Virus record (IMG/VR): IMGVR_UViG_3300042892_005961
Coordinates: 147,169 to 211,168 of that record
Length of the DNA stretch: 64,000 nucleotides
Direction: 5' to 3' (one strand)
Made by a program: the position numbers and the translations under genes. The notes beneath the pieces were generated by a model. The model was not told the origin of the DNA and did not search any database. It was given only the letters and a program-made list of their open reading frames with translations. Of the stretch, positions 1,023 to 62,848 are shown one piece after another; the stretch's first letter is position 1, and each line of letters begins with the position of its first letter.

Positions 1023-1030
1023 TATAAATA
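1023..1030 (-). promoter_or_regulatory. TATTTATA upstream motif (candidate late promoter or leader element)
   Basis: Reads TATTTATA on the coding strand 4 nt before ATG 1018; the motif recurs before many structural genes. Confidence 0.6.
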
Positions 1031-1043
1031 TCTTTATTTTATT

Positions 1044-2354
1044 TTAATCACAAGGACAAGTTACGTTTGTAAATGATGAGAAGTATATTGCTGATGGATA
1101 GTTTGTTGCCATATAAGCACTATCTTTATTCGTGTCTATTCTTGAACAACATTCACTATTTATCGTCACAAAACTTAAATTACCCGCACTATAATCTACA
1201 TAATATATTGCTGTTAAATCACATCTCTCATACACATCATATGTTTGCGGTGTAGGAGTTGGTGGTAAAGGGGTTGAAGTTGGTGGTGCTCCTGAACAAG
1301 CTGTACAAGCTGTTTGTGCTGTTCCTGTTTGTGCCGAACCATCTCTCATAAATTCTCTTTCATCAGTACCATCAGAAACCCAAAATGTAGTGTTATTAGT
1401 CATATCACCATACACGCTACCATACATTGTGGAAGATAAACCTTTTACTTTTGTTAAATTACATAAAGACGTACCTACAACCGTAATATTAACATTACTA
1501 TATTCACCACCAGTACATGCTGTTGGTCCGTTAACTAAACTAACATAACCACTAAACGTAGTTTCAAATGGAGTTGGTTGTGGTGTTGCAGTTGCCGGTA
1601 AAGGAGTTGGTGTTGTAGGACAACTACAAGGCGTTGATCCATAAGATATATCCGTAATACTTGCACCAACTGCGAATAATGAACCATTTTGAATACAATC
1701 ATTTATTACTTGTGGTCCAATACCAAATGTTAAATCAATTGTCTCACCGCAACAATCAATATATCTAATATCACCTCCCGTATCAACCTCAAATTGTACA
1801 GATGTTACACAATTAGGTGTTGGGGTTGGGGTTACAGTTGCCGGTAATGGGGTTACAGTTGCCGGTAATGGTGTTACAGTTGCTGGTAATGGGGTTACTG
1901 TTGCCGGTAATGGGGTTACAGTTGCTGGTAATGGGGTTACTGTTGGTGTATTTGTGGGAGTTGCCGTTGGTACAACTGTTGGTGTGGGAGTTGGTGTGGG
2001 AGTTGGTGTGGGAGTTGGTGTAGTCGGCATTCTTATAGTTAAATTATTATAATCAACACATTCCACACATATAACAGAGTCATCATCTTTTCCATTAAAA
2101 TTTGATGGTATCACTCTAATTGTTTTTATTCCCTCGGGAACAACTACATATGTACCATTTAAACTTGATCTTGGAATATTGGAATATCCAACTAAAGGAA
2201 AATATTTTGACGAGTCAGATCCTGAAAGGGATCCTGTACATAAGGATCCAGAATTGTTGGTACAATCCTCTAAACTTCCCGTACAGGCATACAAATCAAC
2301 ATTTAATATTGATACTCCTAAAGTAAATCCTGTTAATCGTATTGTATATGACAT
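1044..2354 (-). CDS. Pro/Thr-repeat, Cys-rich modular protein (putative fibre or decoration)
   Basis: 436 aa; PTPTPT and (TVTPLPA)x5 linkers separate Cys-containing modules, two of which are shared with 10508..12640. Confidence 0.7.
   Translation of the reverse strand: MSYTIRLTGFTLGVSILNVDLYACTGSLEDCTNNSGSLCTGSLSGSDSSKYFPLVGYSNIPRSSLNGTYVVVPEGIKTIRVIPSNFNGKDDDSVICVECVDYNNLTIRMPTTPTPTPTPTPTPTPTVVPTATPTNTPTVTPLPATVTPLPATVTPLPATVTPLPATVTPLPATVTPTPTPNCVTSVQFEVDTGGDIRYIDCCGETIDLTFGIGPQVINDCIQNGSLFAVGASITDISYGSTPCSCPTTPTPLPATATPQPTPFETTFSGYVSLVNGPTACTGGEYSNVNITVVGTSLCNLTKVKGLSSTMYGSVYGDMTNNTTFWVSDGTDEREFMRDGSAQTGTAQTACTACSGAPPTSTPLPPTPTPQTYDVYERCDLTAIYYVDYSAGNLSFVTINSECCSRIDTNKDSAYMATNYPSAIYFSSFTNVTCPCD
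1318..1412. repeat. 95-nt exact duplicate, copy 1 (copy 2 at 10866..10960)
   Basis: Manual alignment shows identity from gctgttcctgtttgtgccg to catatcaccata. Confidence 0.9.
1829..1944. repeat. 21-nt tandem repeat, about 5 copies, encoding TVTPLPA
   Basis: ggggttacagttgccggtaat-like units visible directly. Confidence 0.9.
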
Positions 2355-2389
2355 ATTTCTATAAATAGTATTATATAGAATTTAAACAA

Positions 2390-3004: not shown

Positions 3005-3046
3005 ATTATTTGTTTCTTTTTATAAATATCTGTTTATTTTGTTTTA

Positions 3047-6000
3047 TTAAGGTTGTTCAGCACAAACACTTTTGTCCGATACCTGACCAGTATATGAAAT
3101 TCTTCCTGAATATGGTGATCCTCCACTATTTAAAGCGAATGAGTGATATTCATTTTCACCGGTATATACGTTTACTAAATTAGGATCTGTAAAGAATTGT
3201 TCTACATTAAATGGTTGATCTGCCGCCGCATATGCTAGAATATAGAAATCCTGACCGTAATTTTGACAAGCCAAACTCGATGATGTATAAGATGGTCCTA
3301 ATTGATAAGCATACGATGTTGCAGGTACAGGTGTGTCTGTAGGTACCGGTGTTGCCGTTGGTGGGAATGGTGTTGGTGTTGGTGATTCTGTTGGTACGTT
3401 TGTTGGTACTGCTGTTGGTACGTTTGTTGGTACTGCTGTTGGTATTGCTGTTGGTACGTTTGTTGGTACGTTTGTTGGTACGTTTGTTGGTACGTTAGTT
3501 GGTACTGCTGTTGGTACGTTAGTTGGTACTGGTGTTGGTGTTGGTCCACAATATGTACAATCACTTGATATGTTACAAGTATTACCACATTCAACATCAG
3601 TTAATAAACCTGAATTAATAATTGGAGCTGTTCCACCTTGTAGACAATGCTGTCTACTTGTACCAGGTAATAAATTAATTGATTGTTCAGTTCCATTACA
3701 ATTTGTTATTGTATAGTTTCCTGTTGTTCCACCTTCATTATAAATTGTCCAACATATACAAGGTAATGGTGTCGAAGTTGGTATTGCTGTTGGTACGTTT
3801 GTAGGTACTGCTGTTGGTACGTTTGTTGGTACTGCTGTTGGTATTGCTGTTGGTACGTTTGTTGGTACGTTTGTTGGTACGTTAGTTGGTATGTTAGTTG
3901 GTATGTTAGTTGGTATATTGGTTGGTTCTGGTGTATTAGTTGGGACCGCCGTTGGTACGTTAGTTGGTATGTTGGTTGGTATGTTGGTTGGTATATTGGT
4001 TGGTACTGCTGTCGGTACTGCTGTTGGTACGTTAGTTGGTAATGGTGTTGGTGTGCTGTAGATAACATCAACATCAACATTAAAGTTACAATCTGGCGTT
4101 GGAGTTGGAGTTGGTGTTGTAGTGTTAGTAGGTGTTGGGGTTGGTGTATTTGTCGCTGGTAATGGCGTAGGAGTTGGTGTATTTGTTGCGGATTCCGGTA
4201 ATGGTGTTGGAGTATTTGTATTTGTTGGTGTAGGAGTTGGTGTACTATAGATAACATCAACATCAACATTAAAGTTACAATCTGGTGTTGGAGTTGCGGT
4301 ATTTGTTGGTGTTGGAGTTGGGGTATTTGTTGGTGTTGGAGTTGGGGTATTAGTTGCTAATTCTGGTGTATTTGTATTTGTTGGTGTTGGGGTTGGTGTT
4401 GGTGTACCATATATAATGTCCACATTTATTTCAAAATCACAATTTGGTGTAGAAGTTGGTGTACTAGTTGGTGTTGGAGTATTTGTATTTGTTGGTGTAG
4501 GAGTTGGTGTACTATATACAACTAAAACATCAACATTAAAGTTACAATCTGGTGTTGGTGTAGGTGTTGCAGTGTTAGTAGGTGTTGGAGTTGGGGTACT
4601 ATAAAATATTTCTACGTCAACAGCAAACTCACAATTTGGTGTGGCTGTTGGGGTTGGTGTTGGGGTTGGTGTACTAGTAACAACTAAAACATCAACTAAG
4701 AAATTACAATTTGGTGTAGGTGATGGAGTAGGTGTTGGTGTACTAGTAACAACTAAAACATCAACATTAAAATTACAATCTGGTGTTGGGGTTGGTGTTG
4801 GGGTTGGTGTACTAGTAACAACTAAAACATCAACATTAAAATTACAATCTGGTGTTGGGGTTGGTGTTGGTGTATTTGTTGCAGGTGATGCCGTTACTGT
4901 TGGTGTTGGGGTGGAAGGTAATGGTGTTGCAGTTGCTGGTAATGGTGTAGCTGTTGGTGTGGCTGTTGGTGTTGGTGTGTTTGTTGGAGTTGGTGTTGGT
5001 CCTGGCTCATATATCGCTAATCCTCCACTAAATCTACAATCTTTCACATCATTTTGACCAATTGATACATATCCATAATCTAAATAATTATTTACTGTAC
5101 AATCATTTGGACCGTATTTGTAAGATGTGAATTTAATTTTTTCACGTCCTTCATTATCTATGAAAAATTCATATGATATTATTTTTTGTTTTGTTGTTCC
5201 TGTAATCGATGAATTACCAATTTCGGTTCCGTATTGTGTGTTTTTACCTTCTCCATCTATAGTTGATCCAGAATAGGTGTTAATATATGTAATTGTATTT
5301 TGTATCGCCCTTTTCCACAGTATTTTTAATTGTTGGTCTATTTCACTATAAACCGAAAGGTTATTAGTTGTACCTCCACTATATAATTTAACACTAATAC
5401 CATTAGTTGTAACGGTATTATCGTTATTAAATGTTAATGTTGTTCCAGTTAATGAAGTTGCTCCACTGATTAAAACATATGTACATCCTGTAACATTTGT
5501 TGTTGTGTTTAATGCAGAAGCATTTTCAGGGTCAGTCATACCTGAATAAACTATACCGTCAATTTCAAATATTGGATAAAGTTTAACATAACCATCGTGT
5601 TTTGTTTCCCCATCTTCATCAATTTCAATAGAAAAACCAAGATCATCGTCAGCCTGTTGTATTAAATAATCAAAATAACTTGTAAATCCTGTTGGTATTT
5701 CTAAATCAAAATTAATGTGGTCTTCCGTTTCTGTAGGTTGACATCCATATCTATATTGATATTTTGATCTACCAAAAATATTATTTGAAATTAAATTACC
5801 TCCCGTCCATAAAGTTGTTGCAGGAATAATTTGATCGATAACACTTGTCCAATAAGGACTCATTTTTTCAATAAACAAATTAATGTCAGGAAATGTGTAT
5901 GCTTTGTTAGGTGAAAAATCTCTAGTAATATAATCTTGATAGATGTCCTCTAATGTAATATAATTCTTCTTATATTTTATTAAATTAGAATTTTTAATTT

Positions 6001-8098
6001 GTTGATGTATCATTAAATCGACATACTCAGCGAATGTTACTCCTGTTTGTGGTGTTAAACTATTTGTACCGAATGTTGTACCTGTTGGACCAAAGTCTCT
6101 AGATTTACGATATATGTCATAATCAACCGCTTGTGCTGATGATAAATAAACTTCAATATTTTTTCTATTTAATAATAAACCAGAATTATCATTAAGATTT
6201 TCTGTTTGATTATTATCAATAATATTTTTTAATTTATATCCTGAGTCTAATCCTGGCAATTTTCTATAAACGTCAAAATAATCTTCACCATAGGTATATG
6301 CACTATTTTTAGTAACAATATTTTTAGTTCTTCCTGTTACCGTTGAATTATCGATATCAATCACTAATGGTGATTTATGATCTGTAGTATTATCATACCA
6401 ACCAGATCCTTTTTGGAAAAAATATTCTGTTGATCCCGTAATTCCTTTAGGTAATAACGTATCTCCATTAACGGGATAATTTTCAGAATTAAATGTTGTT
6501 GTACCTGTAGTTATACCAGTATAATATCTATATGGAAGATATGTTACACCATTAATAGTTCCACCTGTTGGTAAGAATATTCCTGTTTTGTAAGTTTTAG
6601 TTCCCGATATAACATCATAAATGTCACCTTTTAAATCAAATGATTTAGGTAAAGATATTACCTTGTAAACATATTGATTAATTTTAATCATTGGTTCAGG
6701 AGCACCTAAAAATCTTAAAAAAAATTCTAAAGATTGTCTTGTACCTTTTGATTTATAAATGTAAGCCAAGTTAACTAACAACCTTCGATAAAATTCATAT
6801 TCGGCGTCTATTAAAGACGTTCCCGATACTAATCCAGAATATTGTTGTGATGTCTTAGTGTATAATAATTCATCTAAACCTTTCTCATCAATTAAGTTAA
6901 TTGTATCTAACCCTAAAGTATTTGCCAAGTTTTTTAACAATACATCGGGTACGTTATTAATACCGTCATAACTTACATTTCTCATGTAAGCAATATTATC
7001 AATATATTTTTTTACACTATCAAAACTTTGTCCATATAATTGAAATAATGATTCGGCCTTTTTATCGGGACTATCAAATTCAAACAATTGAGGTGATGTT
7101 AAAAACCTAACAAATAAGTTAGACTTATAATCATCAATTTCATCTGCTATATTACTTAAATTTGTTAAATAACTATCATATTCTAAACCTGTAATTTTAA
7201 TGTTCCAATCTTCCTTATCGGATAACGGCCAACTATAATTTACTGAAATTAATTCGGTTTTTGTTTCGTCAAAACTATCTCTTGGTACCTTAAAACTTGA
7301 AGTATATTTTGGAAAAGTGTCTCTGTTTAATAAACTTTCCTCTAAATCATCTAAACCTTTAAAGAACTCTTCAACAACACCATCATTTGGTTTAATTAAT
7401 ATATTTTCAGAAAACCCCGTTAAGTTATCAAATGGTTTACCACTTACCTTTAATGAAATTATATTATCACTATTAGGTTCAATATATGAAATTACATCAT
7501 ATGTTTTTCCACTTATTGAAATTAAATAGTTTTTAAAAGAAGTATAAAAATCTCTGTTTTTATTAATTGAAGGTAATATGGTATTACTTTTCGGTGTAAC
7601 CATAACAATCGAAAATGGATTGTATAGTTTACTGTACTCAACTTTAAATTGAGTGGTGTTACTTATATTATCATATGTAATATTATTAGCGGTAAAATTC
7701 GTTACTTTAATTAAACTATTAGAATCAATTAAAATAGCCGCAGGAAAATTATTAATTATATTAGTTGTCGCAACACCTAGTCTACTTTTTAATGATCCAA
7801 ATAAAGATTTAGCAGCATCATTTTTAGAACCTTTAAATTTTATTTCTTTATTTTTACTTGTAGTACCACTCGTAGTTGTACTTGAAGTTTGTCCTTTTAA
7901 ATCATCTAATGTTAAAAAATTAGAAAACGGATTTGTTTTAAAATTCTTTGTATCTCTTTGTATTACCTCACTATCTAACGCAAAGTTCGTATTAGTCAAT
8001 TGACCGGTACCCGTGGTAATTTGATTACCGACTAGATTGTCACTGAATGTATCGGCACCACTCGCAGCTTGACTTGGAATTTTACGTAATTTTGCCAT
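3047..8098 (-). CDS. Large baseplate-wedge-like protein (T4 gp7/P2 gpI-like motif) with long Pro/Thr repeat C-terminal extension
   Basis: 1683 aa; [20 protein letters not shown] resembles the YKxKGT motif of gp7/gpI-type wedge proteins; about the last 640 aa are PT repeats plus Cys modules. Confidence 0.6.
3389..4040. repeat. Two blocks of 12-nt tandem repeats encoding PTN(V/I)/PTA(V/I) (about 3389..3530 and 3779..4040)
   Basis: gttggtacgttt / gttggtactgct / gttggtatgtta units read directly. Confidence 0.9.
4055..4853 (-). repeat. Eight dispersed copies of (D/N)C(N/E/D)FxVDVxVx(T/Y)S peptide separated by PT linkers
   Basis: Counted in the translation of 3047..8098; DNA unit acatcaacattaaa(a/g)ttacaatctgg recurs. 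Confidence 0.9.
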
Positions 8099-9009: not shown

Positions 9010-9033
9010 ATTCTTTTATTATAAATATAAATC

Positions 9034-18439: not shown

Positions 18440-18494
18440 TCTTATAATAAATAGAAACTATGTGATTTTCTATATATTATAACGAAAAAACATT

Positions 18495-20324
18495 TTAAAA
18501 TGTAGCCGTTCCTAATGTTTTAACCCTAACTTTAATATCTTTATTTGGGAATCTAATTTGGAAGATTTGATTTGACTTCATAAAGATCATATTATCGGAT
18601 TGATTTATCAATCTAGTGTTTTGATCTGTTGTTTGTGATGGCTCCGCAGATGAATACTCACCTCCTATTTTACTGTAAACTCTTGTCTCAATTACATTTA
18701 TCACACCTGATACGCTACCTACGATTTTGTTTAAAGCACCGATAAACAAAGGATCACCCATTTTACGTTTTTCTATTGCAAAATGTTCAATTGTATCCTG
18801 AATTACCGTTTGTATGATATCCGTCTGATTTGCGTTTTTATCTATGTTTAAATCAATTTCTAACCCCATATCGATGACTTCACCACTTACAATATCCAAA
18901 TAGTCATTAATCATTTTATATTCCGTAAGATAGGTTAAAATGTTCGATTTTAGTGTATAAGAAACAGTATCAGTTAAATTACCTTGGTCGTCATATGATA
19001 ATAATTTAATTCTAATCTTATTATCTTCCTCCATAACATTAACCTTAGCTGGTGCTCCGTATGTTGATGGCATCGTTTCAATTAATGATTTATAATCATT
19101 TAATGTAACCGCCCTATTTTGTGCTGCAAAGTTATATGAAACCATATTACGAATTTCTTCGATTGTTGGTTGGTCCGCACCACCTACTGCAGGTGTTATG
19201 TTATTAACTCTAAGTGATTGTACCACACCAGTATTCTTTGCTGGCACAGGTCCTGAAACTATAAATTCAACATCATCTACGTTTGTAATTACATTCACCC
19301 CTAAGTTACTATCTTTACCACCACCCACACGATATTGTACAAATAATGTTGTATTAATTTTTGGTGTAGTTCCTAATGATAGATTATTTAAATAACTCGC
19401 CAAATTAACTTTCAATTGTCCTGTCATATAGTTGTCCAAATTGTCTAATGGATTAACTGTACCCGAACCAAATGTTAATGAAAAATAACCTTCAGGTGTA
19501 TATTCTGTTATGAATTTATTATTAACAGGTAAAAACGTTCCTGCGGTAAAATTATTTGTATCCGATACAGACGTTGGGTCTGGCACAAATACTTTATCTT
19601 GAATTAATGATTTAACCTCATACCATTTGTTTGAGGTATTAGAAAATTCATTTGATGTTGGATTACTTGTAAAAGTTGTACCGTCCTTATGAATAACAGA
19701 TGTTACTCCTAATACGTTTTGTTCGGGTAAGTATAATTTTAAGAAAGGTTTTTGATCCGCTTGGTTTATAACTCTTCTATAAATTTTTGTTATACCATTT
19801 ACAACAGGTTCTCTTTTTGTAATTGTATAAGATATTAATCTATTATTTACATCAAAATTTGGTATCTTTAATCTATTAGGTTCTCCTTTTTTATTAAATG
19901 GAACAGAAAAATCAATATCATCAATTGTTTCAAAAACTTGACCTCCTCCTGAAACTTGAGCACCACTCTTTAATATACCCAAATATCTAACATCTTCTTT
20001 ATCTCCTCTAACATCCACAGTAATTGAAAAATCACATAATGCAACTGATGGTCTAACTCCTGGTAATCTAATACCATATGTTTTTGCAATATGATATAAT
20101 GATTGTCTTTGTTGTGCAAAATCCAACATAGTTTCCTGCCAAACTCTATCAATGTGAAAGTGTAAGTTATCCGCAACCGCGGCATTAATATCTAATAACA
20201 CCGAATAAATCGATGCGTCGTTAAAATTTTTAACTAAATCAGGATAGTAATTTTTAGTTAATGTTACTAATTCATTTCTTAATCCCTGAAAATCTCTTGT
20301 TGCGTATGATATCTGTTTACTCAT
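18495..20324 (-). CDS. Baseplate wedge subunit (T4 gp6 / baseplate J-like)
   Basis: 609 aa; ISYATRDFQGLRNEL, YHIAKTYG, YRVGGG, GGADQPTIEEIR, QNRAVTLNDY are typical gp6 motifs. Confidence 0.85.
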   Translation of the reverse strand: MSKQISYATRDFQGLRNELVTLTKNYYPDLVKNFNDASIYSVLLDINAAVADNLHFHIDRVWQETMLDFAQQRQSLYHIAKTYGIRLPGVRPSVALCDFSITVDVRGDKEDVRYLGILKSGAQVSGGGQVFETIDDIDFSVPFNKKGEPNRLKIPNFDVNNRLISYTITKREPVVNGITKIYRRVINQADQKPFLKLYLPEQNVLGVTSVIHKDGTTFTSNPTSNEFSNTSNKWYEVKSLIQDKVFVPDPTSVSDTNNFTAGTFLPVNNKFITEYTPEGYFSLTFGSGTVNPLDNLDNYMTGQLKVNLASYLNNLSLGTTPKINTTLFVQYRVGGGKDSNLGVNVITNVDDVEFIVSGPVPAKNTGVVQSLRVNNITPAVGGADQPTIEEIRNMVSYNFAAQNRAVTLNDYKSLIETMPSTYGAPAKVNVMEEDNKIRIKLLSYDDQGNLTDTVSYTLKSNILTYLTEYKMINDYLDIVSGEVIDMGLEIDLNIDKNANQTDIIQTVIQDTIEHFAIEKRKMGDPLFIGALNKIVGSVSGVINVIETRVYSKIGGEYSSAEPSQTTDQNTRLINQSDNMIFMKSNQIFQIRFPNKDIKVRVKTLGTATF

Positions 20325-20778: not shown

Positions 20779-20808
20779 ATTCAATAAATATAGATAAACC
20801 TAAAATGG

Positions 20809-29640: not shown

Positions 29641-29683
29641 AATATTTGTTTTATTACTATAAATATCCCAAGTTTTATTAATA

Positions 29684-40570: not shown

Positions 40571-40610
40571 TATCTTCTTTTATCTATAAATAGATAATAT
40601 ATGATTTTAA

Positions 40611-42491: not shown

Positions 42492-42502
42492 ACCTATAAA
42501 TA

Positions 42503-43385: not shown

Positions 43386-43430
43386 AATACTATAATTTAC
43401 TTAATAACTACTTCAAAGTAAAGTTTTTAA

Positions 43431-43467: not shown

Positions 43468-43488
43468 CGTATATGAAAATCTGTAATA

Positions 43489-43977: not shown

Positions 43978-44057
43978 ATTGTGTGTTTGTTAAGTTTTGT
44001 TAGTTATTTACTTTCTAATAAATATATCCAAAAGGAAAATAATTTTATTTTGAATTA

Positions 44058-44085
44058 ATTATCTCAAAAAGGTTGTTTATGTCAA
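44058..44085 (-). promoter_or_regulatory. Sigma70-like promoter upstream of tail tube
   Basis: TTGACA-N16-GATAAT on the minus strand; the TATTTATT motif also occurs at 44017..44024. Confidence 0.35.
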
Positions 44086-44114
44086 TTATTTTTCGTAGTT
44101 TTTTACAGGCCCCA

Positions 44115-44190
44115 GTATCTAGTTCCAGTTTAATACTCTACTTTAATAAATAATATATCATTAATAAATACTAGTGTATCTAGTTCCAGT
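44115..44190. repeat. 15-bp direct repeat GTATCTAGTTCCAGT x2 (44115..44129, 44176..44190)
   Basis: Exact copies 61 bp apart in an AT-rich intergenic region. Confidence 0.9.
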
Positions 44191-44228
44191 ATTCTGGGTA
44201 AAGTATAATTATTTTTTTGTTATACATA

Positions 44229-44244
44229 TGTTCCACGTGGAGCA
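44229..44244. promoter_or_regulatory. parS-like palindrome TGTTCCACGTGGAGCA
   Basis: 15/16 match to the palindromic parS variant TGTTCCACGTGGAACA; intergenic. Confidence 0.6.
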
Positions 44245-44246
44245 TT

Positions 44247-44274
44247 AAAAAAGGGCACCATTTCTGATACCCTT
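44247..44274 (-). terminator. Intrinsic terminator after sheath gene
   Basis: AAGGGTATCA-GAAA-TGGTGCCCTT (two G-U pairs, GNRA loop) then TTTT. Confidence 0.85.
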
Positions 44275-44298
44275 CTTATTTTTATATCTCCTTTTAGA

Positions 44299-47283
44299 TT
44301 AGATATTTTCAAATGAAGCTCCTGTTGGTGTAATAATGAATTCCACATCGATATATTCAAGAGAACGAGTTGGTTTAATGTAAATCTTACCTCTCATTGT
44401 GTTTGCGTCGATATCCTCAGGATCGTTAGAAACTGTTACACGGAAGTCATACAAACCTCTTTCTTTCTTAATTGCGTCCAAGATAGGGTTTACCAATCTT
44501 AAGAATTCATTTCTTACTTGGTCATCGTTTTGTTCAAACAATAATCTTACAGAAACTGCAGAAATTAACTTTCTTGCTCTTAATAACAATCTTCTTACGT
44601 TGATTCTATCTAAAGCGGATTCTCTAACTTGTAACGTTTTGTTACCCCAAATAATAGTACCTGTATCAGAGAATGTAGCGATTGGGTTAATTCTGTTCTT
44701 ATATAATACGTCTCTATCATCTAAAGTCAATTTTTTAGTTGCTTTGATCGCATTTACTAAACCTCTACTATAACCCGCAACCGCGAACCAAGGATAAGAC
44801 ACGTTGTCAGTTAAGGCAATGTTCTTTACAACCTCACCTGTTGGTGGGATATATAATTGAGTTGCATTATCTGTATCTCTTACTTGAATCCAAGGCCAAT
44901 ATGTTGCAGAATAGTTAGAATCTATACCCGCGTCATCTAAAGCAGATACAATAGAATCTGTTGCAGTTGCCCCTGTGATATTTGGTGAGTTCATAATATA
45001 TAATGAATCAGCTCTTTCAGTTTCAATCATATCAATCGCTTGATTAACTAATGAACTATGATCTTGGAAGTTAATACCAGGTGTTGCAAATACGTTAATA
45101 TCTACAGCTTCAGGATTTGAATACGTCTCAATACCTTGTAAGTAAGCGTAATAGTCAGAATTACCTACTGAATCACTAAACACTCCTCCGGGGGTTGTAT
45201 GTCCTAACTTATAGATAGATTTACCAAAAATATAACGATCGTCGTTAGTTCTTATTGATCTATATATATCCCAACCATCCCTACCTCCATAAACTGCAAA
45301 AGTGAATTTACGGAAATTAATATTAGTTAATTTATTATTACCATTATTATTAAGCTCATCTTGACCTTCTAAATCATATGGTGTTGTTTGGAAAGTTGTT
45401 GTTCCAGTAATTGTGGAGGCGTTTACAGACAAATGGAAACCAAATGTTTCTGTTGTTGCCATCTCACCTTTATATTTTAATAAATCTCTATCGAATCCAA
45501 CAGCGTCAGATAAACCTAACATAACTTTTCTTACCTTATCTCCACCTTCAATATTAGGTGAACCATTCACATCGTAAGTTTCAACATCACCCGCATCGTT
45601 ATATTTTGTTTTGAATATTACATTACCTAATCCCATATTAATTCCTGATACAGTACCAAAGTTTTTGTTGTTTGCAAAACCTCTAAAACCAGCAGGAATA
45701 GCATCTACAGGTGCTCCGTCCGCCATAACCAACATAATTCTTTTAGAAACTAACGCGTATTCACCATCAGATGTACCGATTTTCTTACCTATATAACCTG
45801 GAGTATCTGGATTCATAGAACATCTTGAATATTTTTCAAGAGCTACTTGATTCTCATCAGTATCGTTAAAATCACGAACCACTAAATCAAACTCCATAGT
45901 TTCTAAATTAATATTTTGAATATTGATTTTTACTTCAAAGTTAGCAGCCTCTCCGTCGGAGATTGTAATAACTTGAAATAAATCAGCAACATTACCACCA
46001 CGAACTTCAGAAACAACCATCGGTGAAATTGTTGTATCCCATGGTTTTAAGTAATTATATGAATTAGAATCTTCTTCTGATTCATATGAAACGTCCATAG
46101 AAATACCTCTTACTAATCCTCTTTCAAAGGCGGTTCCTAAATAATTAGGATATGATTCATGTACATATACCGGATAGTCACCTTTATCTTTATCAAATAC
46201 ATCAGTTCCTAAAACTTTAGAAATATATTTTGATGATGATCGATTTAATGAACAAACAAATTGTTTAACTCCACTTGTCGTACCTGTTACGTTGATTGAA
46301 AACTCACCCATTGGGTTTGTATTCATATCAGATCCCGTAACACCTGATAATATGAATTTATTATCATCCTTAACTTCATGTATTAATGTTTGTCCGCTAT
46401 ATATACCTCTTGATCTTATTGCTGCAACCACTACATTATGGTATTCATCGGCTAAAAGTGCTTCCCAATCAAATTGAGTAATTGACCATTTGTTAGTTGA
46501 ATTTGTAAATGTGAATAAATAAGAATAAATACCATTTACACCGTCACCGTCTGGAGGAGTGACCAAACCATCAGATTGGTGATGCATTGTATTCCACCAT
46601 TCTTTTGTATTATTACTATTACTATATTTTTCTCCAGATAATGGAGATACTAATTCTGTACCATTTCCAACAATTGCACTATCTTCTGTTCCTTCCGTAT
46701 TTCTTCCTATCCAAAAATATTCATTAGTTGATCCGGTAGTTGAACCTTCATAATCACCGTAATTATCTTTTAAATATGTTACAATATCAGTACCATCAAC
46801 AGATGTTACACCTGACAAATGAGCAATAATTTCATTTAATGAATTTATTGAAGATCCGGTTTCTGTTGTTGTAATTCCTGTTGTTGTAATTGTTACACTA
46901 CCAACTTCATTAGTTACGCCAGAATACCCTTCTAAAATTACACCACCTACGGTTTTAATACCGAATGTTTTATATGGTCTATAACCTGTAAGACCCAATA
47001 CTCTCGTTACGAATAATTGATTAGATTCTTGTAAATATGATTTTGCAACATATCCTAATTCATATTTTGGATTACCGTCACTGAACTTTTCAGGTGAAGT
47101 AGATCCAAAATACAATTTGAATTCGTCAAAATTTGAAATTAAAATAGGTTCGAAAGCTGGACCTTTTAAAGTCTCACCAGCTAAACCTAATGTTGTAACA
47201 CCTACACTCTGTGCTACAAATGTTAAATCGAGCTCGGATGTATAGACACCTGGAGACACGAAAACTCTGTTATTACTTGCCAT
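44299..47283 (-). CDS. Tail sheath protein
   Basis: 994 aa; FVSPGVYTSELD N-terminus; YWPWIQ, PWFAVAGYSRG, LYKNRINPIA, WGNKTLQ, LDRINVRRLL, IKPTRSLEYI. Confidence 0.95.
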   Translation of the reverse strand: MASNNRVFVSPGVYTSELDLTFVAQSVGVTTLGLAGETLKGPAFEPILISNFDEFKLYFGSTSPEKFSDGNPKYELGYVAKSYLQESNQLFVTRVLGLTGYRPYKTFGIKTVGGVILEGYSGVTNEVGSVTITTTGITTTETGSSINSLNEIIAHLSGVTSVDGTDIVTYLKDNYGDYEGSTTGSTNEYFWIGRNTEGTEDSAIVGNGTELVSPLSGEKYSNSNNTKEWWNTMHHQSDGLVTPPDGDGVNGIYSYLFTFTNSTNKWSITQFDWEALLADEYHNVVVAAIRSRGIYSGQTLIHEVKDDNKFILSGVTGSDMNTNPMGEFSINVTGTTSGVKQFVCSLNRSSSKYISKVLGTDVFDKDKGDYPVYVHESYPNYLGTAFERGLVRGISMDVSYESEEDSNSYNYLKPWDTTISPMVVSEVRGGNVADLFQVITISDGEAANFEVKINIQNINLETMEFDLVVRDFNDTDENQVALEKYSRCSMNPDTPGYIGKKIGTSDGEYALVSKRIMLVMADGAPVDAIPAGFRGFANNKNFGTVSGINMGLGNVIFKTKYNDAGDVETYDVNGSPNIEGGDKVRKVMLGLSDAVGFDRDLLKYKGEMATTETFGFHLSVNASTITGTTTFQTTPYDLEGQDELNNNGNNKLTNINFRKFTFAVYGGRDGWDIYRSIRTNDDRYIFGKSIYKLGHTTPGGVFSDSVGNSDYYAYLQGIETYSNPEAVDINVFATPGINFQDHSSLVNQAIDMIETERADSLYIMNSPNITGATATDSIVSALDDAGIDSNYSATYWPWIQVRDTDNATQLYIPPTGEVVKNIALTDNVSYPWFAVAGYSRGLVNAIKATKKLTLDDRDVLYKNRINPIATFSDTGTIIWGNKTLQVRESALDRINVRRLLLRARKLISAVSVRLLFEQNDDQVRNEFLRLVNPILDAIKKERGLYDFRVTVSNDPEDIDANTMRGKIYIKPTRSLEYIDVEFIITPTGASFENI

Positions 47284-47316
47284 TGATTTTTGTTTGGTTA
47301 ATTAATTTTATTACTT

Positions 47317-47395
47317 ATCTTATAAATATCTTTGTTTTTATCAAAGATTTCCCAACTTTTCTTAAAAAGATAGTTATTTATCTTTTAATATCTTT
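47317..47395. promoter_or_regulatory. Divergent promoter region with ATCTTT/AAAGAT operator-like array
   Basis: Inverted repeats ATCTTTG-7-CAAAGAT (47328..47348) and AAAAGATA-6-TATCTTTT (47365..47386); TATTTATA (minus, 47321..47328) and TATTTATC (plus, 47375..47382). Confidence 0.55.
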
Positions 47396-47398
47396 TAT

Positions 47399-47557
47399 AT
47401 GGAAAACACTCAAAAAAACGTTAAAATAAGTGGGAAACACCACGAAATGTTAAAAAATTACTGTGATAAAAATGGTTTAAAAATCTATAAAGTTTTAGAA
47501 AAACACATAGAAGAACTTTGTAAACCTAAAAAGAAGGACATATACGGGGATGATTAA
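47399..47557 (+). CDS. Ribbon-helix-helix-like DNA-binding protein
   Basis: Not in ORF track. MENTQKNVKISGKHHEMLKNYCDKNGLKIYKVLEKHIEELCKPKKKDIYGDD (52 aa): alternating strand KNVKIS, helix, G turn, helix. Confidence 0.7.
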   Translation: MENTQKNVKISGKHHEMLKNYCDKNGLKIYKVLEKHIEELCKPKKKDIYGDD

Positions 47558-48816
47558 TAAAGATAAACAAAATCTAAAGTGGCACCGAATACAGGAGCAC
47601 TTGTTAGTGTTATTTGTTTTTGTCCTGTTATTTCATATCCCTCATCACTAAATTCAATAAGTCCATTTGTGGTAACACTAATAACACTATTAATCTTTTC
47701 TTGTAGATCAAAAACTAAGTTGACTCCATTGAAATTAAAACTTTCACGACCAACCTGTAATTCATTACCGTTTTGGTCATACATTTTGTTATTTCTACCT
47801 TTATAGTAACTTACAACAATTACATCACCTTGTAATGGGGTTCCGCTAAAATTTATGTTTGATAATCCCCCAAAATGAGAATGTGAATAATGTACGTCTT
47901 TTTCCTGTACAATTCCATTAATTGATACGTTAAATAAAACTGTTATATTCTCACCTACACTATATATTGTACTAGTACCATTTGATATTAATGTGGCTAA
48001 CGTTATATCAATTGTTTTAGATATATATTTTTTAGTTAAACTACCTCCACCTTTCATCGATTCATTTACGATAAAAGCTCGACTAATAGCTGGTTTAACC
48101 TCGAATTCATCACTATCAATTAAAAACCCTAACATAGTACATTTATATGTTTGCATATAAAATCTACGACCATCAATTGTTTCCATAGGTGTATTGTCTT
48201 CTATTGTGTCTAAAACAATTGGAATATAATGACCTTTAACTTGAGTGTAATCTTGTCTAGATGAAAAATTTTGTAAAACTAATTTATTAAATTTATTTAA
48301 ATCTCTAAACTTATTACAAACAATAGTAATATCATATGTAATATCACATGGAATCGGTTGTGGTATTTTATAAATGTCCGCTCCCATAGAATTACCATTC
48401 CAAGTTGGAACTGTTGCATAATGAAACTGATGTCTATCAGGAATAGTTCTTTGTATTGACGGGTTTGTACCAAACTGTACGTCAGGTTTTCTAATGATTG
48501 TAATAAATGGTAATTTTACATTACCGTCAGAATCTGAAAATTCCCAATTGTTTGAAAATTCACCCCATCTTTGAATTGTTAATATTTTATCAATAACAGG
48601 TATTTGTACACCATCAGAAACAACTTTAAATGTATTTTTTACATAATCCAACATACCCCTATCCAAATCATCATGTAAAATAGAGTCAGGTAAAAAAGAA
48701 TCGGATTTTGTAATCATATCCAATAACTCCTCTCTTCTTTTTAATATACCTTCACCTTGGTAAGTATCCTTACCACCGTAAACGTTGATCATGTTTTTTC
48801 TTTTAGGTATTCCCAT
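47554..48816 (-). CDS. Tail completion/terminator protein (gp15-like) with two C-terminal small beta domains
   Basis: Start moved from TTG 48855 to ATG 48816, right after the upstream stop. LPFITIIR, PIPCDITYDITI; C-terminal repeated SV..NG...I.F..P..G..Y units. Confidence 0.65.
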   Translation of the reverse strand: MGIPKRKNMINVYGGKDTYQGEGILKRREELLDMITKSDSFLPDSILHDDLDRGMLDYVKNTFKVVSDGVQIPVIDKILTIQRWGEFSNNWEFSDSDGNVKLPFITIIRKPDVQFGTNPSIQRTIPDRHQFHYATVPTWNGNSMGADIYKIPQPIPCDITYDITIVCNKFRDLNKFNKLVLQNFSSRQDYTQVKGHYIPIVLDTIEDNTPMETIDGRRFYMQTYKCTMLGFLIDSDEFEVKPAISRAFIVNESMKGGGSLTKKYISKTIDITLATLISNGTSTIYSVGENITVLFNVSINGIVQEKDVHYSHSHFGGLSNINFSGTPLQGDVIVVSYYKGRNNKMYDQNGNELQVGRESFNFNGVNLVFDLQEKINSVISVTTNGLIEFSDEGYEITGQKQITLTSAPVFGATLDFVYLY

Positions 48817-48817
48817 A

Positions 48818-49330
48818 TTAAACTCCTCTAAATTCACCTTCTTGTGTTGGAGCACAAACTATACTTCTATAGTGTGGTTTGTACCCAAACATTTTATGTT
48901 TATTATCCGATGTAATTCTACCGTCATTTGTAACGGTATAATATCTTAATCTTTCTTCTGAATCCGCATAACCAATATAATCACCATATCTAATATCAAC
49001 ACCCAATTCATTAAGGTGTGTAATATAAACCGATAATATCATATTACCTGGCTCATTATATCTCATAAGACCTTTTGTGTATGATGAATTTTTTGGTTCA
49101 TCAATTTTAACCAACGCATTAAACTCAACGGGAGGAAAAAACTTAATTTCATCCATTCCCGCCTCGGCGTATACGTCGTCATTGTCGGTCTTTTGTCTAT
49201 CAACACGATATAAGACCAATTTCATATTTAAATCCCCGTGTAGATACTCCTGACCCATCTGAATGTTAATATCAAAGTCATCTTGGGAGAAGAATTTACC
49301 TAAACGAGTAATTGGTAGTTTATTGTTCAT
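48818..49330 (-). CDS. Head completion / neck protein (gp14-like)
   Basis: 170 aa; VLYRVD...DDVYAEA...PPVEF, GDYI; TATTTATT at 49336..49343. Confidence 0.65.
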   Translation of the reverse strand: MNNKLPITRLGKFFSQDDFDINIQMGQEYLHGDLNMKLVLYRVDRQKTDNDDVYAEAGMDEIKFFPPVEFNALVKIDEPKNSSYTKGLMRYNEPGNMILSVYITHLNELGVDIRYGDYIGYADSEERLRYYTVTNDGRITSDNKHKMFGYKPHYRSIVCAPTQEGEFRGV

Positions 49331-49384
49331 ATCCTAATAAATAGTTTAATCTTCCATTCTATTTAGTTATATTATATATAATAG

Positions 49385-51334: not shown

Positions 51335-51342
51335 TATTTATA
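51335..51342 (+). promoter_or_regulatory. TATTTATA motif on plus strand
   Basis: 15 nt upstream of the plus-strand neck gene; motif orientation flips with gene orientation. Confidence 0.65.
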
Positions 51343-55367: not shown

Positions 55368-55456
55368 GTTTTATATTTTTTTAATGTGACGTATTAGCTT
55401 GTGGAAAACCACAGTTTGCCTTGTTTACATTATAAATATAATTAAAAAAGGGGGTA

Positions 55457-55813: not shown

Positions 55814-55856
55814 ATGTTATAAATACATTAAGAACCGATTGTTGTTTATGTTTGTT

Positions 55857-59028: not shown

Positions 59029-59093
59029 TTTGTGTTTGTTTTTCTTTTATATAAATAGTTTTATTTTTTGTCTATTACTTAGTATTTTTATTA

Positions 59094-62000: not shown

Positions 62001-62822
62001 TTCACCATCGACATAACCGATAATTGAATCCTGTGCGGAACAACTTGAATTCATTAAACAATCAAGTGCACTACAAGCGGTGGTTAAATCATTAAAAAAT
62101 GGACCCGTATTATCGGTATTACCAATTATTGTAATTTGATATGGATGATTAATTGGTTCATTCGTTGGTGTTGGTGTACTTGTTGCCGGTACAGGTGTGT
62201 CTGTTGGTACGGGAGTTGGTGTACTTGTTGCCGGTAAAGGTGTAGGAGTATCAGTTGGTACCGATGTTGCATCTGGCGTTGGTGTAGGAGTTGGTGTTGT
62301 TGATGTAGATTCTAATAAAATATTATCACCATTTTCTTGTAATAAACTATCACCATTCTCTTGTAATAAATTATCACCTAAATTATCAGTTGGTGTAGGT
62401 GTAGGTGTTGCCGTTGGTAAATTTGTAGGTGTAGGGGTTGGTGTTGGTAAATCTTCACCATATGTTGTAAAATAACCGTTATCATTTAACCAAGTTTTAG
62501 CATCACTACCATTTGTAAACGGTTCTAAACCATTTGTTATTGGTAAAACGTTTAATAAATCTAATAAAGATTGTTCGGTTAAATCTGTTGATCTCCAAAA
62601 ATTAATATAAGAATCTTCATCGACAGGTGTTGGGTGGTCACCTGTTGGTACTTGATTGGCAATAACATAACCTAACTCTTCATCAGGTCCCATCCACCAT
62701 TTAACCCCACCTGGATCTTGTGAATAATCTTGATCTGAAACACCTATTGCAATGTTTCCAATTTGTATTGTTCCGTCTATGGTGGAACCTGTGTTGTATG
62801 CGAAGGGTCTTGTTGTTGCCAT
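59094..62822 (-). CDS. Large multi-domain PT-linked protein (putative fibre or decoration)
   Basis: 1242 aa; about seven globular segments separated by long P/T/A/E linkers; TATTTATA at 62830..62837. Confidence 0.7.
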   Translation of the reverse strand: MATTRPFAYNTGSTIDGTIQIGNIAIGVSDQDYSQDPGGVKWWMGPDEELGYVIANQVPTGDHPTPVDEDSYINFWRSTDLTEQSLLDLLNVLPITNGLEPFTNGSDAKTWLNDNGYFTTYGEDLPTPTPTPTNLPTATPTPTPTDNLGDNLLQENGDSLLQENGDNILLESTSTTPTPTPTPDATSVPTDTPTPLPATSTPTPVPTDTPVPATSTPTPTNEPINHPYQITIIGNTDNTGPFFNDLTTACSALDCLMNSSCSAQDSIIGYVDGEIFDYVYVSSNSNETVSLLFDGYYILADGSGLYFLTQFTDSQFVSGVNCTPATATPTPTPEGTPTPTTTPTSTPEGAVLTIIVPPGSPSIIFDGETYTSNVSAGVIKNQQYTINLDYGLSDFWYWSGDGINLPAANSKFTIVYVTGSTATLQANFYAAATLAPTETPTPLPTSTPTATPTPEPATATPTPTTTSTPTPTITVGPLDFTISYNCTAGGRISTSNHGGGSGVIDRSNNLFNTEEEALAETSWFELPNPNNFVTTGIVPPFSSGTLWVSIRDRNNPTDVFAKSITFDCTSTATPLPATNTPTPEPTVESTPTPTATEVPPTDTPTPTPEPTSGPTDTPTPTPTPVASCSGKPYVLSNLLTTPSSGESLWLSNIIPATALNLVNILGTNSSVLYFNEIDNDGTDQTTYFGNAVGTSFTVTLCQNGNSAIYSGTNSAMVYDSFNYSYFLDSTKLSLVQSSPVSTFTFGEVFYIDILVSGQSTPTPTPTSTTEPTNVPTDTPTPTPEATSTPEPATATPVPTGVPTDTPTPTPLAATSTPTPEPTSTETPLPATSTPTPTPTPIYYYYYLLNCNLGDNKYGRSLDPDINLSGFTFNVDTNICYTIAGNDDGPYYDYDLDNATIVTDCTDILCSTPTPTPTSTPTPTPTATEVPATSTPTPTPTSGSAPMTVTITEVGSNVVMSASGTVDLSGLTLVSSSAGPFGNGGLGISNATFVCGASGSSGSSYSGFTSVPSNFGSGSGLPHSSGTGQSFGVIMNMAPPYLLIVPTGYTSGANISSSQTFTGQTLSSLGLTNGTYTYTWSGGSIDVVVGIGLGGPTPTPTPTSIGGGIGAWYFYSDEGGIFDAQPPLSDGNSIFLIRNNETNEVTETFNPNKSNGVNEIYFNLDDSNGTNYTTQFTELATNGGTISITQGANTVTYTSTTPGTFFADTIGGIFTIQTGPATQTVTSANPFVYADPISITFGS

Positions 62823-62848
62823 TATGTTATATAAATACTTTTATTTTT

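What the first reader, a model, noticed from the sequence alone, without database searches (positions are those of the whole stretch)
1023..62837. Strand-specific TATTTAT(A/T) motif before structural genes, the reverse complement of the T4 late promoter
Seen on the coding strand upstream of starts at 1018 (4-nt gap), 2354 (5), 3004 (16), 9009 (10), 18439 (6), 20778 (4), 29640 (17), 40570 (14), 42491 (3), 43977 (39), 47283 (37), 49330 (5), 55367 (63), 55813 (4), 59028 (21) and 62822 (7). It flips to the plus strand before the plus-strand neck gene (51335..51342). It was not seen just upstream of RNR, DnaB, SSB or SNF2. Known: T4 late promoters are TATAAATA. Inference: a phage-specific late promoter that yields near-leaderless mRNAs, or an RNA-level translation element, given the 3-5 nt gaps.
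Basis: partly seen in the sequence, partly recalled or inferred. Interest (0 to 1): 0.65.

Follow-up and report, generated by a model that had tools for sequence, protein, structure and literature searches.

The report
Late-gene promoter of freshwater jumbo phages
A short DNA word, TATTTATA, sits just before the tail and baseplate genes of a giant freshwater phage and its many relatives; it is most likely the phage's own late-gene promoter, a two-letter variant of the classic T4 late promoter, and it is often placed so close to the start codon that the messages would have no leader.

Summary
In the 75-kb contig that holds the window, 22 of 36 TATTTAT(A/T) copies lie in the 4% that is non-coding. 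All 22 are on the sense strand of the gene downstream, against 2.3±1.4 expected.

In a complete 335-kb relative the count is 72 sense to 3 other. The gap to the ATG peaks at 4 nt, and there is no -35 element. The motif is kept before tube, sheath, neck and other genes in every relative examined, while the flanks diverge. It is also the leading sense-strand intergenic 8-mer in two cultured phages, Flavobacterium phage immuto and Microcystis phage Mel-JY01.

These phages share an unannotated 233-aa sigma-like protein whose closest named relative is T4 gp55. No phage RNA polymerase was found.

Best reading: a T4-type, -10-only late promoter (TATAAATA changed to TATTTATA), read by host polymerase with a phage sigma, giving leaderless mRNAs at about 40% of sites. 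No transcript 5' ends could be mapped. The sigma gene lies outside the window's contig. The site before the DNA polymerase gene is probably a different promoter.

The parts
1023..1030 (-). TATTTATA, 4 nt before the ATG at 1018 of a 707-aa ORF that runs off the window start. Predicted leaderless late promoter.
   Evidence: ortholog in G001 keeps the motif and the 4-nt gap
2360..2367 (-). TATTTATA, 5 nt before the ATG at 2354 (436 aa, unknown). It follows a terminator-like hairpin plus T-run.
   Evidence: G001 ortholog has a 4-nt gap
3021..3028 (-). TATTTATA, 16 nt before the ATG at 3004 (188 aa, unknown); A-rich leader.
9020..9027 (-). TATTTATA, 10 nt before the ATG at 9009 (303 aa). It heads a unit with the 1683-aa ORF 3047-8098.
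18446..18453 (-). TATTTATT, 6 nt before the ATG at 18439 (1205 aa). It heads the run of large ORFs down to 9034.
20783..20790 (-). TATTTATT, 4 nt before the ATG at 20778 (gp25-like baseplate wedge, followed by the gp6-like wedge 18495-20324).
29658..29665 (-). TATTTATA, 17 nt before the ATG at 29640 (67-aa ORF, followed by 28756-29433 and the Dps-like 28401-28772).
40585..40592 (-). TATTTATA, 14 nt before the ATG at 40570 (1588 aa, followed by the baseplate-wedge-like 35481-35807 and the 1936-aa ORF).
   Evidence: kept in 12 of 12 distinct relatives
42495..42502 (-). TATTTATA, 3 nt before the ATG at 42491 (626 aa, unknown). Predicted leaderless.
   Evidence: kept in 3 of 3 relatives with a 3-nt gap
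44017..44024 (-). TATTTATT, 39 nt before the ATG at 43977 of the tail tube gene.
   Evidence: kept in 38 of 38 distinct relatives. The same arrangement is seen before the 162-aa tube-like genes of immuto and Mel-JY01. Metatranscriptome contig depth drops to about 0 upstream in 3 of 4 runs (not start-site grade).
44145..44170 (-). Two further TATTTATT copies (44145-44152, 44163-44170) in the sheath-tube spacer, between two direct repeats. Role uncertain; one copy has the disfavoured T before it.
47321..47328 (-). TATTTATA, 37 nt before the ATG at 47283 of the tail sheath gene. It abuts an inverted repeat at 47328-47348.
   Evidence: invariant in 39 of 39 distinct relatives down to 62% protein identity and 36 of 36
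49336..49343 (-). TATTTATT, 5 nt before the ATG at 49330 (170 aa, followed by the tail-fibre-like 47554-48855). It lies in a 54-nt divergent spacer.
   Evidence: kept in 29 of 29 relatives, 27 of them with a 5-nt gap
51335..51342 (+). TATTTATA on the + strand, 15 nt before the ATG at 51358 of the + strand head-tail adaptor (neck) gene.
   Evidence: kept in 26 of 26 relatives with gaps of 4-21 nt while the flanks diverge
55431..55438 (-). TATTTATA, 63 nt before the DNA polymerase ATG at 55367, after a terminator-like hairpin. DOUBTFUL member: probably the -10 box of another promoter class that happens to read TATTTATA here.
   Evidence: Only 6 of 19 relatives have the word here; the others have TATAAT-like or TATACT-like boxes at the same place.
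55818..55825 (-). TATTTATA, 4 nt before the ATG at 55813 (118 aa, unknown). Predicted leaderless.
   Evidence: 12 of 19 relatives keep the motif, 11 of them with a 4-nt gap, although the upstream DNA is unrelated among them
59050..59057 (-). TATTTATA, 21 nt before the ATG at 59028 (757 aa, unknown).
62830..62837 (-). TATTTATA, 7 nt before the ATG at 62822 (1242 aa, unknown).

Best explanation
RV-TATTTAT(A/T) is the -10-like, -35-less late promoter of a large clade of T4-related phages: about 335-kb freshwater jumbo phages, Flavobacterium phage immuto and Microcystis phage Mel-JY01. On the non-template strand it equals the T4 late promoter TATAAATA except for the two central bases (AA to TT). 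It keeps the two adenines, positions 2 and 6, that T4 gp55 puts into deep pockets. It is most likely read by host core RNA polymerase carrying a phage-encoded, highly diverged sigma of 233 aa. This sigma has a sigma region 2 domain nearest to T4 gp55 and is found in relatives about 10 kb beyond the end of this contig. Transcription would start about 5 nt after the motif. At 8 of the 17 window sites the ATG lies 3-7 nt after the motif, so the mRNA would begin at or next to the AUG and be leaderless. The other sites give short A-rich leaders without a Shine-Dalgarno sequence. Shown here: position, strand, enrichment, conservation, lack of a -35 box, co-occurrence with the sigma, and absence of a phage RNA polymerase. 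Inferred: promoter activity, late timing, which sigma reads it, and the exact start site.
For: Enrichment and strand: 22 sense to 0 antisense in the intergenic DNA of the contig, against 2.3 +/- 1.4 in shuffles. The counts are 72 to 3 in the complete relative G001 and 41 to 3 in the 211-kb contig of the same phage. Anatomy: information is confined to 10 positions, with non-T at -1 in 62 of 65 sites and no -35 signal. Nine of 65 G001 sites directly follow a terminator-like hairpin, and one back-to-back pair sits in a divergent spacer. Conservation: the motif is kept in 38/38 tube, 36/36 sheath, 29/29, 26/26 and 12/12 distinct orthologous upstream regions, against 1/29 before the hub gene. Before gene 55813 it recurs with the same 4-nt gap next to unrelated upstream DNA. 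Spacing: the gap peaks at 4 nt (16 of 65; p about 6e-13 against uniform) and 30 of 65 gaps are 3-7 nt. That places the motif start about 12 nt before the ATG, the published in-silico signature of leaderless genes (PMC3160421). Gene class: the motif precedes baseplate, tube, sheath, fibre-like and adaptor genes, but not RNR, DnaB, exonuclease, UvsX-like or SSB. Reader: the 233-aa ORF in G001 hits PHROG 234 'late sigma transcription factor' (E 9e-5) and Pfam Sigma70_r2 (E 1e-3). T4 gp55 is its best PDB sequence hit (E 1e-3). A deeper profile hits only sigma factors. An AlphaFold model (pLDDT 92) aligns to gp55 chain 7d7c_F at Z 10.6 over 118 of 137 residues. Pocket residues R57, F86 and Y97 of gp55 align with conserved R53, F81 and Y92, whereas H95, which lines the A-9 pocket, aligns with Y90 (PMC7892883). 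Immuto has this sigma (E 9e-17) and the same motif before its tail genes, but lacks the phage's other sigma. Mel-JY01 also has both sigma and motif, there with SD-bearing leaders. No Rpb1, Rpb2 or T7-type RNA polymerase domain was found in the complete relative.
Against: No transcript 5' end was mapped. The only RNA data are short metatranscriptome contigs, which cannot show starts. Reproducible contig ends with adapter sequence lie at 43971-43974, not at the predicted start near 44012. One contig spans the tube promoter. The sigma gene is not on the window's contig or on the 211-kb contig of the same phage; it is inferred from relatives. Its sequence similarity to gp55 is weak, and it has an extra C-terminal helical domain that aligns with sigma region 4 in full-length sigma matches, yet no -35 box is seen. 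No gp45-type clamp was detected, so T4-style clamp activation is unsupported. With strict T4 geometry (+1 six nt after the motif) the modal 4-nt gap would start transcription on the T of ATG, so a 1-nt shorter spacing must be assumed. 'Late' rests on gene function only, and many motif-led genes have no annotation.
Confidence: 0.72

Rival explanations
1. The motif is a promoter, but it is read by the phage's other sigma factor. That is a bona fide sigma-70-family protein with regions 2 and 4 (269 aa; G001:214427-215236; G002:133555-134364, about 1.6-2.4 kb outside this contig), not the gp55-like protein.
For: This sigma is present in the same phage as the window (88.9% identical copy in G002). 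It scores well above the Pfam cut-offs. In G001 it lies about 1.2 kb downstream of a TATTTATA site.
Against: Flavobacterium phage immuto uses the same motif but has no detectable homologue of this sigma (best tblastn E 0.75), whereas it has the gp55-like protein. A sigma with region 4 would be expected to need a -35 element, and none is present.
Confidence: 0.13
2. The motif acts in RNA: either an A/U-rich translation enhancer next to the start codon, or a cleavage site for a phage or host RNase that trims polycistronic RNA to leaderless messages.
For: The motif is strand-specific and lies close to the start codon at many genes (gaps 3-7 nt). Contig ends with adapter sequence near the tube start codon hint at discrete RNA ends that are not at the predicted start.
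Against: Gaps range from 3 to 41 nt with two classes, which does not fit one ribosome-positioning role. In Mel-JY01 the motif lies 30-36 nt upstream of leaders that carry their own GGAG. Sites follow terminator-like hairpins and sit in divergent spacers where no upstream transcript on that strand is expected. The word matches a known -10-type element at 6 of 8 positions.
Confidence: 0.07
3. It is the host's housekeeping promoter box (for a Bacteroidota host, the -7 element), not a phage-specific signal.
For: The leaders are A-rich and lack Shine-Dalgarno sequences. The nearest cultured phage with the same sigma infects Flavobacterium, so a Bacteroidota host is plausible.
Against: The Bacteroidota consensus, TTG at -33 and TAnnTTTG at -7 (from my own knowledge of the literature), is not matched, and there is no -33 signal. 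Separate sites of that host type occur in these phages: 10 sense to 1 antisense in G001, 6 to 0 in G002, and a distinct TTG-N20-TATATTTAG class before immuto's array of small genes. The motif is shared by phages reported on hosts of different phyla and is absent before the replication genes.
Confidence: 0.05
4. The functional word is TATAAATA on the opposite strand: a true T4-type promoter firing away from the adjacent gene, antisense into the upstream gene.
For: TATTTATA is the exact reverse complement of the T4 late promoter.
Against: All 22 contig sites and 72 of 75 sites in G001 point toward a start codon. The distance to that ATG is sharply peaked. The flanking preferences, non-T before the motif and A-rich after it, are asymmetric in the sense direction. 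No genes lie in the antisense direction.
Confidence: 0.02
5. It is a chance by-product of AT-rich intergenic DNA.
For: The window-wide count is not above expectation (33 found, 41.7 expected).
Against: Intergenic shuffles give 2.3 +/- 1.4 against 22 observed, and the strand split is 22 to 0. The motif is conserved across relatives while the flanks change.
Confidence: 0.01

Closest known systems
Bacteriophage T4 late promoters (TATAAATA) read by gp55 with gp33 and the gp45 clamp
   Same: An 8-bp A/T word at the -10 position on the non-template strand. There is no -35 element. It lies before virion genes. A small phage sigma with a region 2 domain is present. Six of 8 letters are identical, including the adenines that correspond to T4 A-12 and A-8, which gp55 inserts into deep pockets (PMC7892883).
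   Different: The central AA is TT, so A-9 of T4 is replaced. The candidate sigma is 233 aa with an extra C-terminal helical domain and only weak sequence similarity to gp55. No gp45-type clamp was detected in the complete relative. About 40% of sites sit 3-7 nt from the ATG, whereas T4 late mRNAs have Shine-Dalgarno leaders (own knowledge).
Leaderless genes recognised by a -10-like 'TA' signal about 12 nt before the start codon (Zheng et al. 2011, PMC3160421)
   Same: In the modal class the motif begins 12 nt before the ATG. All such starts in the window are ATG.
   Different: Here the signal is a long, phage-specific word tied to one gene class rather than the host TANNNT box. No 5' ends have been mapped.
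Thermus phage P23-45 middle and late promoters, which are -35-less and give mostly leaderless transcripts (Berdygulova et al. 2011; recalled from memory, not checked here)
   Same: Phage late genes are driven by -10-only promoters that yield leaderless mRNAs.
   Different: The promoter word is different and is read by host sigma A with phage-encoded modifiers rather than a phage sigma. The phage lineage is unrelated.
Jumbo phages with their own multisubunit RNA polymerases (phiKZ, AR9)
   Same: The genome exceeds 300 kb and has a short A/T-rich late promoter word without a -35 element.
   Different: No Rpb1 or Rpb2 domains were found in the complete relative, and sigma-like proteins are present instead.

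Membership tests
T4-type late transcription system (gp55-dependent promoters) | A -10-like element alone, with no conserved -35 region, on the non-template strand before late genes | tested here: met
   Information content is confined to R-V-TATTTATA in 65 aligned sites and is nil between -60 and -3. Orientation is sense for 22 of 22 and 72 of 75 sites.
T4-type late transcription system (gp55-dependent promoters) | Consensus word TATAAATA | tested here: not met
   The word is TATTTATA. TATAAATA on the sense strand is not enriched: 14 sense in G001, against 46 on the other strand that largely mirror the TATTTATA sites.
T4-type late transcription system (gp55-dependent promoters) | A phage-encoded gp55-family sigma (region 2 homology domain, no region 4) | tested here: inconclusive
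   A 233-aa ORF in relatives G001 and G003 hits PHROG 234 (E 9e-5). Its best PDB sequence hit is gp55 (E 1e-3). hhalign gives 55% probability. The structural match to 7d7c_F has Z 10.6. However, it has an extra C-terminal domain, other sigma region 2 domains score similarly, and the gene is not on the window's own contig.
T4-type late transcription system (gp55-dependent promoters) | A gp45-type sliding clamp and gp33 co-activator | tested here: not met
   PHROG 223 (the gp45 family) found nothing in the complete relative G001 or in G002. A diverged clamp could have been missed. gp33 was not searched.
T4-type late transcription system (gp55-dependent promoters) | Transcription starts about 6 nt downstream, late in infection, coupled to replication | not testable with these tools
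   Only assembled metatranscriptome contigs were available.
Leaderless mRNA genes | A -10-like signal beginning about 10-12 nt before the start codon | tested here: met
   Eight of 17 window sites have gaps of 3-7 nt. In G001 the mode is 4 nt (16 of 65), and 30 of 65 gaps are 3-7 nt. The criterion comes from PMC3160421.
Leaderless mRNA genes | The mapped mRNA 5' end coincides with the A of AUG | not testable with these tools
   No raw-read RNA run was available, and contigs cannot show starts.
Bacteroidota housekeeping promoter (TTG at -33, TAnnTTTG at -7) | A bipartite -33/-7 consensus | tested here: not met
   There is no -33 signal, and the word differs from TAnnTTTG. Separate sites that do fit that consensus occur elsewhere in these phages.
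phiKZ/AR9-type jumbo phages with their own RNA polymerase | Phage-encoded beta and beta-prime-like subunits | tested here: not met
   PF00623 and PF00562 gave no match in the complete 335-kb relative, while all 14 control genomes matched. The T7-type family PF00940 also gave no match, but its control matched nothing either.

The most novel reading that the evidence does not exclude
The 233-aa protein founds a large, so far unannotated branch of phage late sigma factors: at least 1,412 clusters at 50% identity, with every source name seen being 'hypothetical protein' or a mislabel. This branch would have re-tuned the T4-type -10 word at its two central positions. In phages of hosts that do not use Shine-Dalgarno sequences, the promoter would be fused directly to the start codon, so that one 12-nt cassette (TATTTATA-N4-ATG) supplies both transcription and translation initiation and can move with a gene.
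Probability: 0.45. Interest if true: 0.65.

Novelty: new variant of a known kind. Interest (0 to 1): 0.52.

Why it matters
The motif gives a simple, testable rule for annotating late transcription units in a very abundant group of uncultured freshwater jumbo phages. There are 389 sheath relatives in IMG/VR and thousands of copies of the sigma in public metagenomes. It extends the T4 late-transcription model to a diverged sigma and promoter pair, where the change in the DNA word can be compared with changes in the sigma's base-binding pockets. It also suggests wholesale use of leaderless late mRNAs by a phage. Two cultured phages, Flavobacterium phage immuto and Microcystis phage Mel-JY01, carry the same sigma and motif, so the proposal can be tested at the bench.

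Tried and rejected
**DNA search for close relatives.** A megablast of the window against GenBank phages found nothing.

**Literature.** Full-text searches for TATTTATA with phage promoter terms, for immuto and for Mel-JY01 found no description of this promoter.

**RNA reads.** Ten lake and river metatranscriptome runs hold parts of the tube and sheath region, but only as assembled contigs. Four were laid on 42401-48400. They show coverage of both genes and near-zero depth in the bins upstream of both motifs (44001-44200 in three of four runs; 47401-47600 in all four). They cannot define starts, and one contig spans the tube promoter. I do not count this as support.

**Structure of the sigma.** Foldseek on the good model gave only weak E-values (at least 0.03), although nearly all of the top 50 rows were sigma factors.

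**Word-based protein search.** It was saturated by near-identical relatives and gave no names.

**Phage polymerase and clamp.** Searches for Rpb1, Rpb2, T7-type RNA polymerase and the gp45-type clamp in the complete relative were negative. The T7-type control matched nothing anywhere, so that result is uninformative.

**Second motif class.** A simple k-mer contrast on motif-free intergenic regions of G001 gave no clear second motif. The regex for the Bacteroidota-type bipartite promoter found sense-biased intergenic sites in G001 and G002, but only chance matches inside genes in the window.

**Annotation.** Pfam and PHROG left most motif-led genes unannotated, so 'structural' is shown for only part of them.

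**Not analysed.** The 484-kb uncultured phage LR756508, which also has the sigma, was not analysed for intergenic enrichment. Only raw counts were seen.


Full report
**What the window is.** The window is bases 11239-75238 of a 75,240-nt IMG/VR viral contig that CheckV rates 24% complete. It has 31% G+C, and nearly all genes are on the minus strand. PHROG scans identify the parts of a contractile-tail phage with T4-like components. These are gp6-like and gp25-like baseplate wedge proteins, another wedge-like protein, a hub, tube, sheath and head-tail adaptor. There are also RNR, DnaB, an exonuclease, a UvsX/RecA-like protein, SSB, an SNF2 helicase and a family B DNA polymerase. Several ORFs of 1200-1900 aa have no match.

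The sheath protein has 389 relatives in IMG/VR. They include a 211-kb contig of the same phage (G002) and a complete 335,630-nt relative (G001, 76% sheath identity). Runs that hold parts of the region are lake, river and other freshwater metatranscriptomes. Start codons are preceded by A-rich stretches without GGAG.

**The observation.** The window-wide count of TATTTAT(A/T) is not above chance (33 against 41.7 expected), but the distribution is. In the contig, 22 of 36 copies lie in the 4.2% that is non-coding. All 22 are on the sense strand of the gene downstream, and none is antisense. Dinucleotide-preserving shuffles of the intergenic DNA give 2.3 ± 1.4, with a maximum of 8 in 2000. TATTTATA is the most frequent sense-strand intergenic 8-mer. 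Copies inside genes show no strand bias.

With my own ORF calls, G001 has 72 non-coding sense copies against 3 others, and G002 has 41 against 3.

**Anatomy.** Sixty-five G001 sites were aligned. Information is confined to the 8-mer and the two bases before it (purine, then non-T in 62 of 65). Nothing is conserved between -60 and -3, so there is no -35 box. Nine of the 65 sites directly follow a G+C hairpin with a T-run, and one pair sits back to back in a divergent spacer. In the window, the sites at 2360 and 55431 follow such hairpins, and 49336 sits in a 54-nt divergent spacer.

The distance from the motif to the start codon has two classes:
- a sharp peak at 4 nt (16 of 65 sites), with 30 of 65 at 3-7 nt;
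- a broad class of 10-41 nt with A-rich leaders.

**Conservation.** Before the sheath gene the word is invariant in 39 of 39 distinct upstream sequences, from relatives down to 62% protein identity. A tblastn-anchored survey gave these counts of distinct upstream regions that keep the motif:

| Gene | Motif kept |
|---|---|
| tube | 38/38 |
| sheath | 36/36 |
| gene 49330 | 29/29 |
| neck gene | 26/26 |
| gene 40570 | 12/12 |
| hub gene (control) | 1/29 |

Before gene 55813 the motif recurs with the same 4-nt gap next to upstream DNA that is unrelated among relatives. Before the neck gene it shifts between gaps of 4 and 21 nt.

The site 63 nt before the DNA polymerase gene is kept in only 6 of 19 relatives; the others have TATAAT-like or TATACT-like boxes at the same place, so it is probably another promoter class. 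SNF2, which lacks the motif in the window (where TATTTAG stands at 49360), has it in 15 of 26 relatives.

**Who reads it.** PHROG 234 (the T4 gp55 family, found with T4's own gp55) matches one 233-aa ORF in G001. That ORF also hits Pfam Sigma70_r2 just below the cut-off. A profile of close homologues has T4 gp55 as its best PDB hit. The full representative search finds 1,412 clusters at 50% identity. A profile of 82 diverse members hits only sigma factors in the PDB and aligns with gp55 by hhalign.

With that alignment, AlphaFold2 gives pLDDT 92. Foldseek's top 50 rows are almost all sigma factors, though with weak E-values. VIA-align places gp55 chain 7d7c_F second, at Z 10.6 with 118 of 137 residues aligned, among sigma region 2 domains of similar score. 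The C-terminal 90 residues form a further helical domain that aligns with region 4 in full-length sigma matches.

The gene is absent from the window's contig and from G002. By synteny with G001 it would lie about 10 kb past the shared end of both contigs.

The same phage also encodes a conventional sigma with regions 2 and 4 (269 aa), just outside the contig. No Rpb1, Rpb2 or T7-type polymerase domains and no gp45-type clamp were found in G001.

**Link between sigma and motif.** In GenBank phages the 233-aa protein has homologues only in Flavobacterium phage immuto, Microcystis phage Mel-JY01 and one 484-kb uncultured phage.
- In immuto, TATTTATA is again the top sense-strand intergenic 8-mer (24 against 6). 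It precedes the tail spike, the 162-aa tube-like gene and other large genes. A separate TTG-N20-TATATTTAG class precedes its array of small genes. Immuto lacks the 269-aa sigma.
- In Mel-JY01 the motif is again among the most sense-biased intergenic 8-mers (16 against 3). It lies 30-36 nt before genes whose leaders carry GGAG.

The DNA word is therefore constant across phages whose leaders differ. That fits a promoter read by a shared phage factor. It does not fit a host promoter or a translation signal.

**Relation to T4.** The T4 structure paper shows that gp55 flips non-template A-12, A-9 and A-8 of the -10-like element into pockets, and that no -35 conservation exists (PMC7892883). Placing TATAAATA at -13 to -6 is my inference, from my own knowledge and consistent with those flipped positions; I did not read it in that paper. 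Written on the same strand, the new word differs only at positions 4 and 5. It keeps the adenines that correspond to A-12 and A-8.

In the alignment, gp55 pocket residues R57, F86 and Y97 face conserved R53, F81 and Y92, while H95 of the A-9 pocket faces Y90 (conservation). This is inference from a weak alignment.

**Leaderless reading.** A -10-like signal about 12 nt before the start codon is the accepted in-silico mark of leaderless genes (PMC3160421), and the 4-nt class fits it exactly. With T4's spacing, the start would fall one base later, on the T of ATG. A spacing one base shorter, as for sigma-70 (own knowledge), has to be assumed. This step is inferred.

**RNA data.** Four lake metatranscriptomes held as contigs cover the tube and sheath genes. 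Depth is near zero in the bins upstream of both motifs: 44001-44200 in three of four runs, and 47401-47600 in all four. One contig spans the tube promoter. In two runs contigs end with adapter sequence at 43971, and a contig of a third run ends at 43974 with unmatched letters. These ends are unexplained, and the data cannot map starts.

**Verdict.** The element is best explained as a T4-type late promoter with an altered word, probably read by a diverged gp55-like sigma and often fused to the start codon. It is a new variant of a known kind. I found no published description. Promoter activity, timing, the start site and the identity of the sigma remain to be shown experimentally.

Noticed in passing
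window 55396-55420 (-), in the leader of the DNA polymerase gene (ATG at 55367): A conserved hairpin (CTGTGG-loop-CCACAAG) has compensatory changes at four base pairs across 20 relatives. It recalls the translational operator through which T4 DNA polymerase represses its own mRNA (own knowledge).
   Followed up: partly
G002:133555-134364 (-), about 1.6-2.4 kb before the start of the window's contig; G001:214427-215236: The phage encodes a second, conventional sigma-70-family factor with regions 2 and 4 (269 aa). Its promoter class was not identified.
   Followed up: partly
window 47328-47348 (-): A perfect 7-bp inverted repeat (ATCTTTG-N7-CAAAGAT) abuts the sheath promoter motif. It is nearly invariant in 39 relatives and has no T-run. 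It could be a regulator site.
   Followed up: no
window 44115-44190 (-), sheath-tube spacer: Two 15-nt direct repeats (ACTGGAACTAGATAC) flank two extra TATTTATT copies. The same arrangement is present in G001 near 157898.
   Followed up: no
window 43971-43974: In two independent lake metatranscriptomes contigs end at 43971 and run into Illumina adapter; a contig of a third run ends at 43974 with 19 unmatched letters. The ends lie a few bases inside the tube coding sequence. They could reflect a discrete RNA end or an RT stop; they are unexplained.
   Followed up: no
G001 and G002 intergenic regions; Mel-JY01; immuto 60-76 kb: Bipartite sites fitting TTG-N17-21-TAnnTTTG, the Bacteroidota-type promoter consensus, are sense-biased: 10 to 1 in G001, 6 to 0 in G002 and 17 to 0 in Mel-JY01. 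Immuto has a repeated TTG-N20-TATATTTAGGTATCAATAATTAAAAC cassette before about 17 small genes. It is odd that a phage reported on Microcystis also shows the Bacteroidota-type pattern.
   Followed up: partly
window 49359-49384 (+), before the SNF2 helicase gene: The window has TATTTAG at the spot where 15 of 26 relatives have TATTTAT before SNF2. This may be a decayed or weakened copy of the promoter.
   Followed up: partly
window about 3370-3900, inside the 1683-aa ORF 3047-8098: A long run of short tandem repeats (the + strand reads TTGGTACGTTTG and similar) gives a weak Pfam PT-repeat hit. It is probably a low-complexity linker in a large virion protein.
   Followed up: no
G001:86275-91590 (L093): The complete relative carries a predicted tmRNA gene and four tRNA genes (Glu, Ser, Met, Thr) in one cluster.
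   Followed up: no
G000 and G002 contig ends (window 64000 and beyond): The 75-kb and 211-kb contigs of this phage end at the same place, about 10 kb short of where relatives carry the gp55-like sigma. IMG/VR labels the 211-kb contig 'provirus', which looks unlikely for this kind of phage.
   Followed up: no
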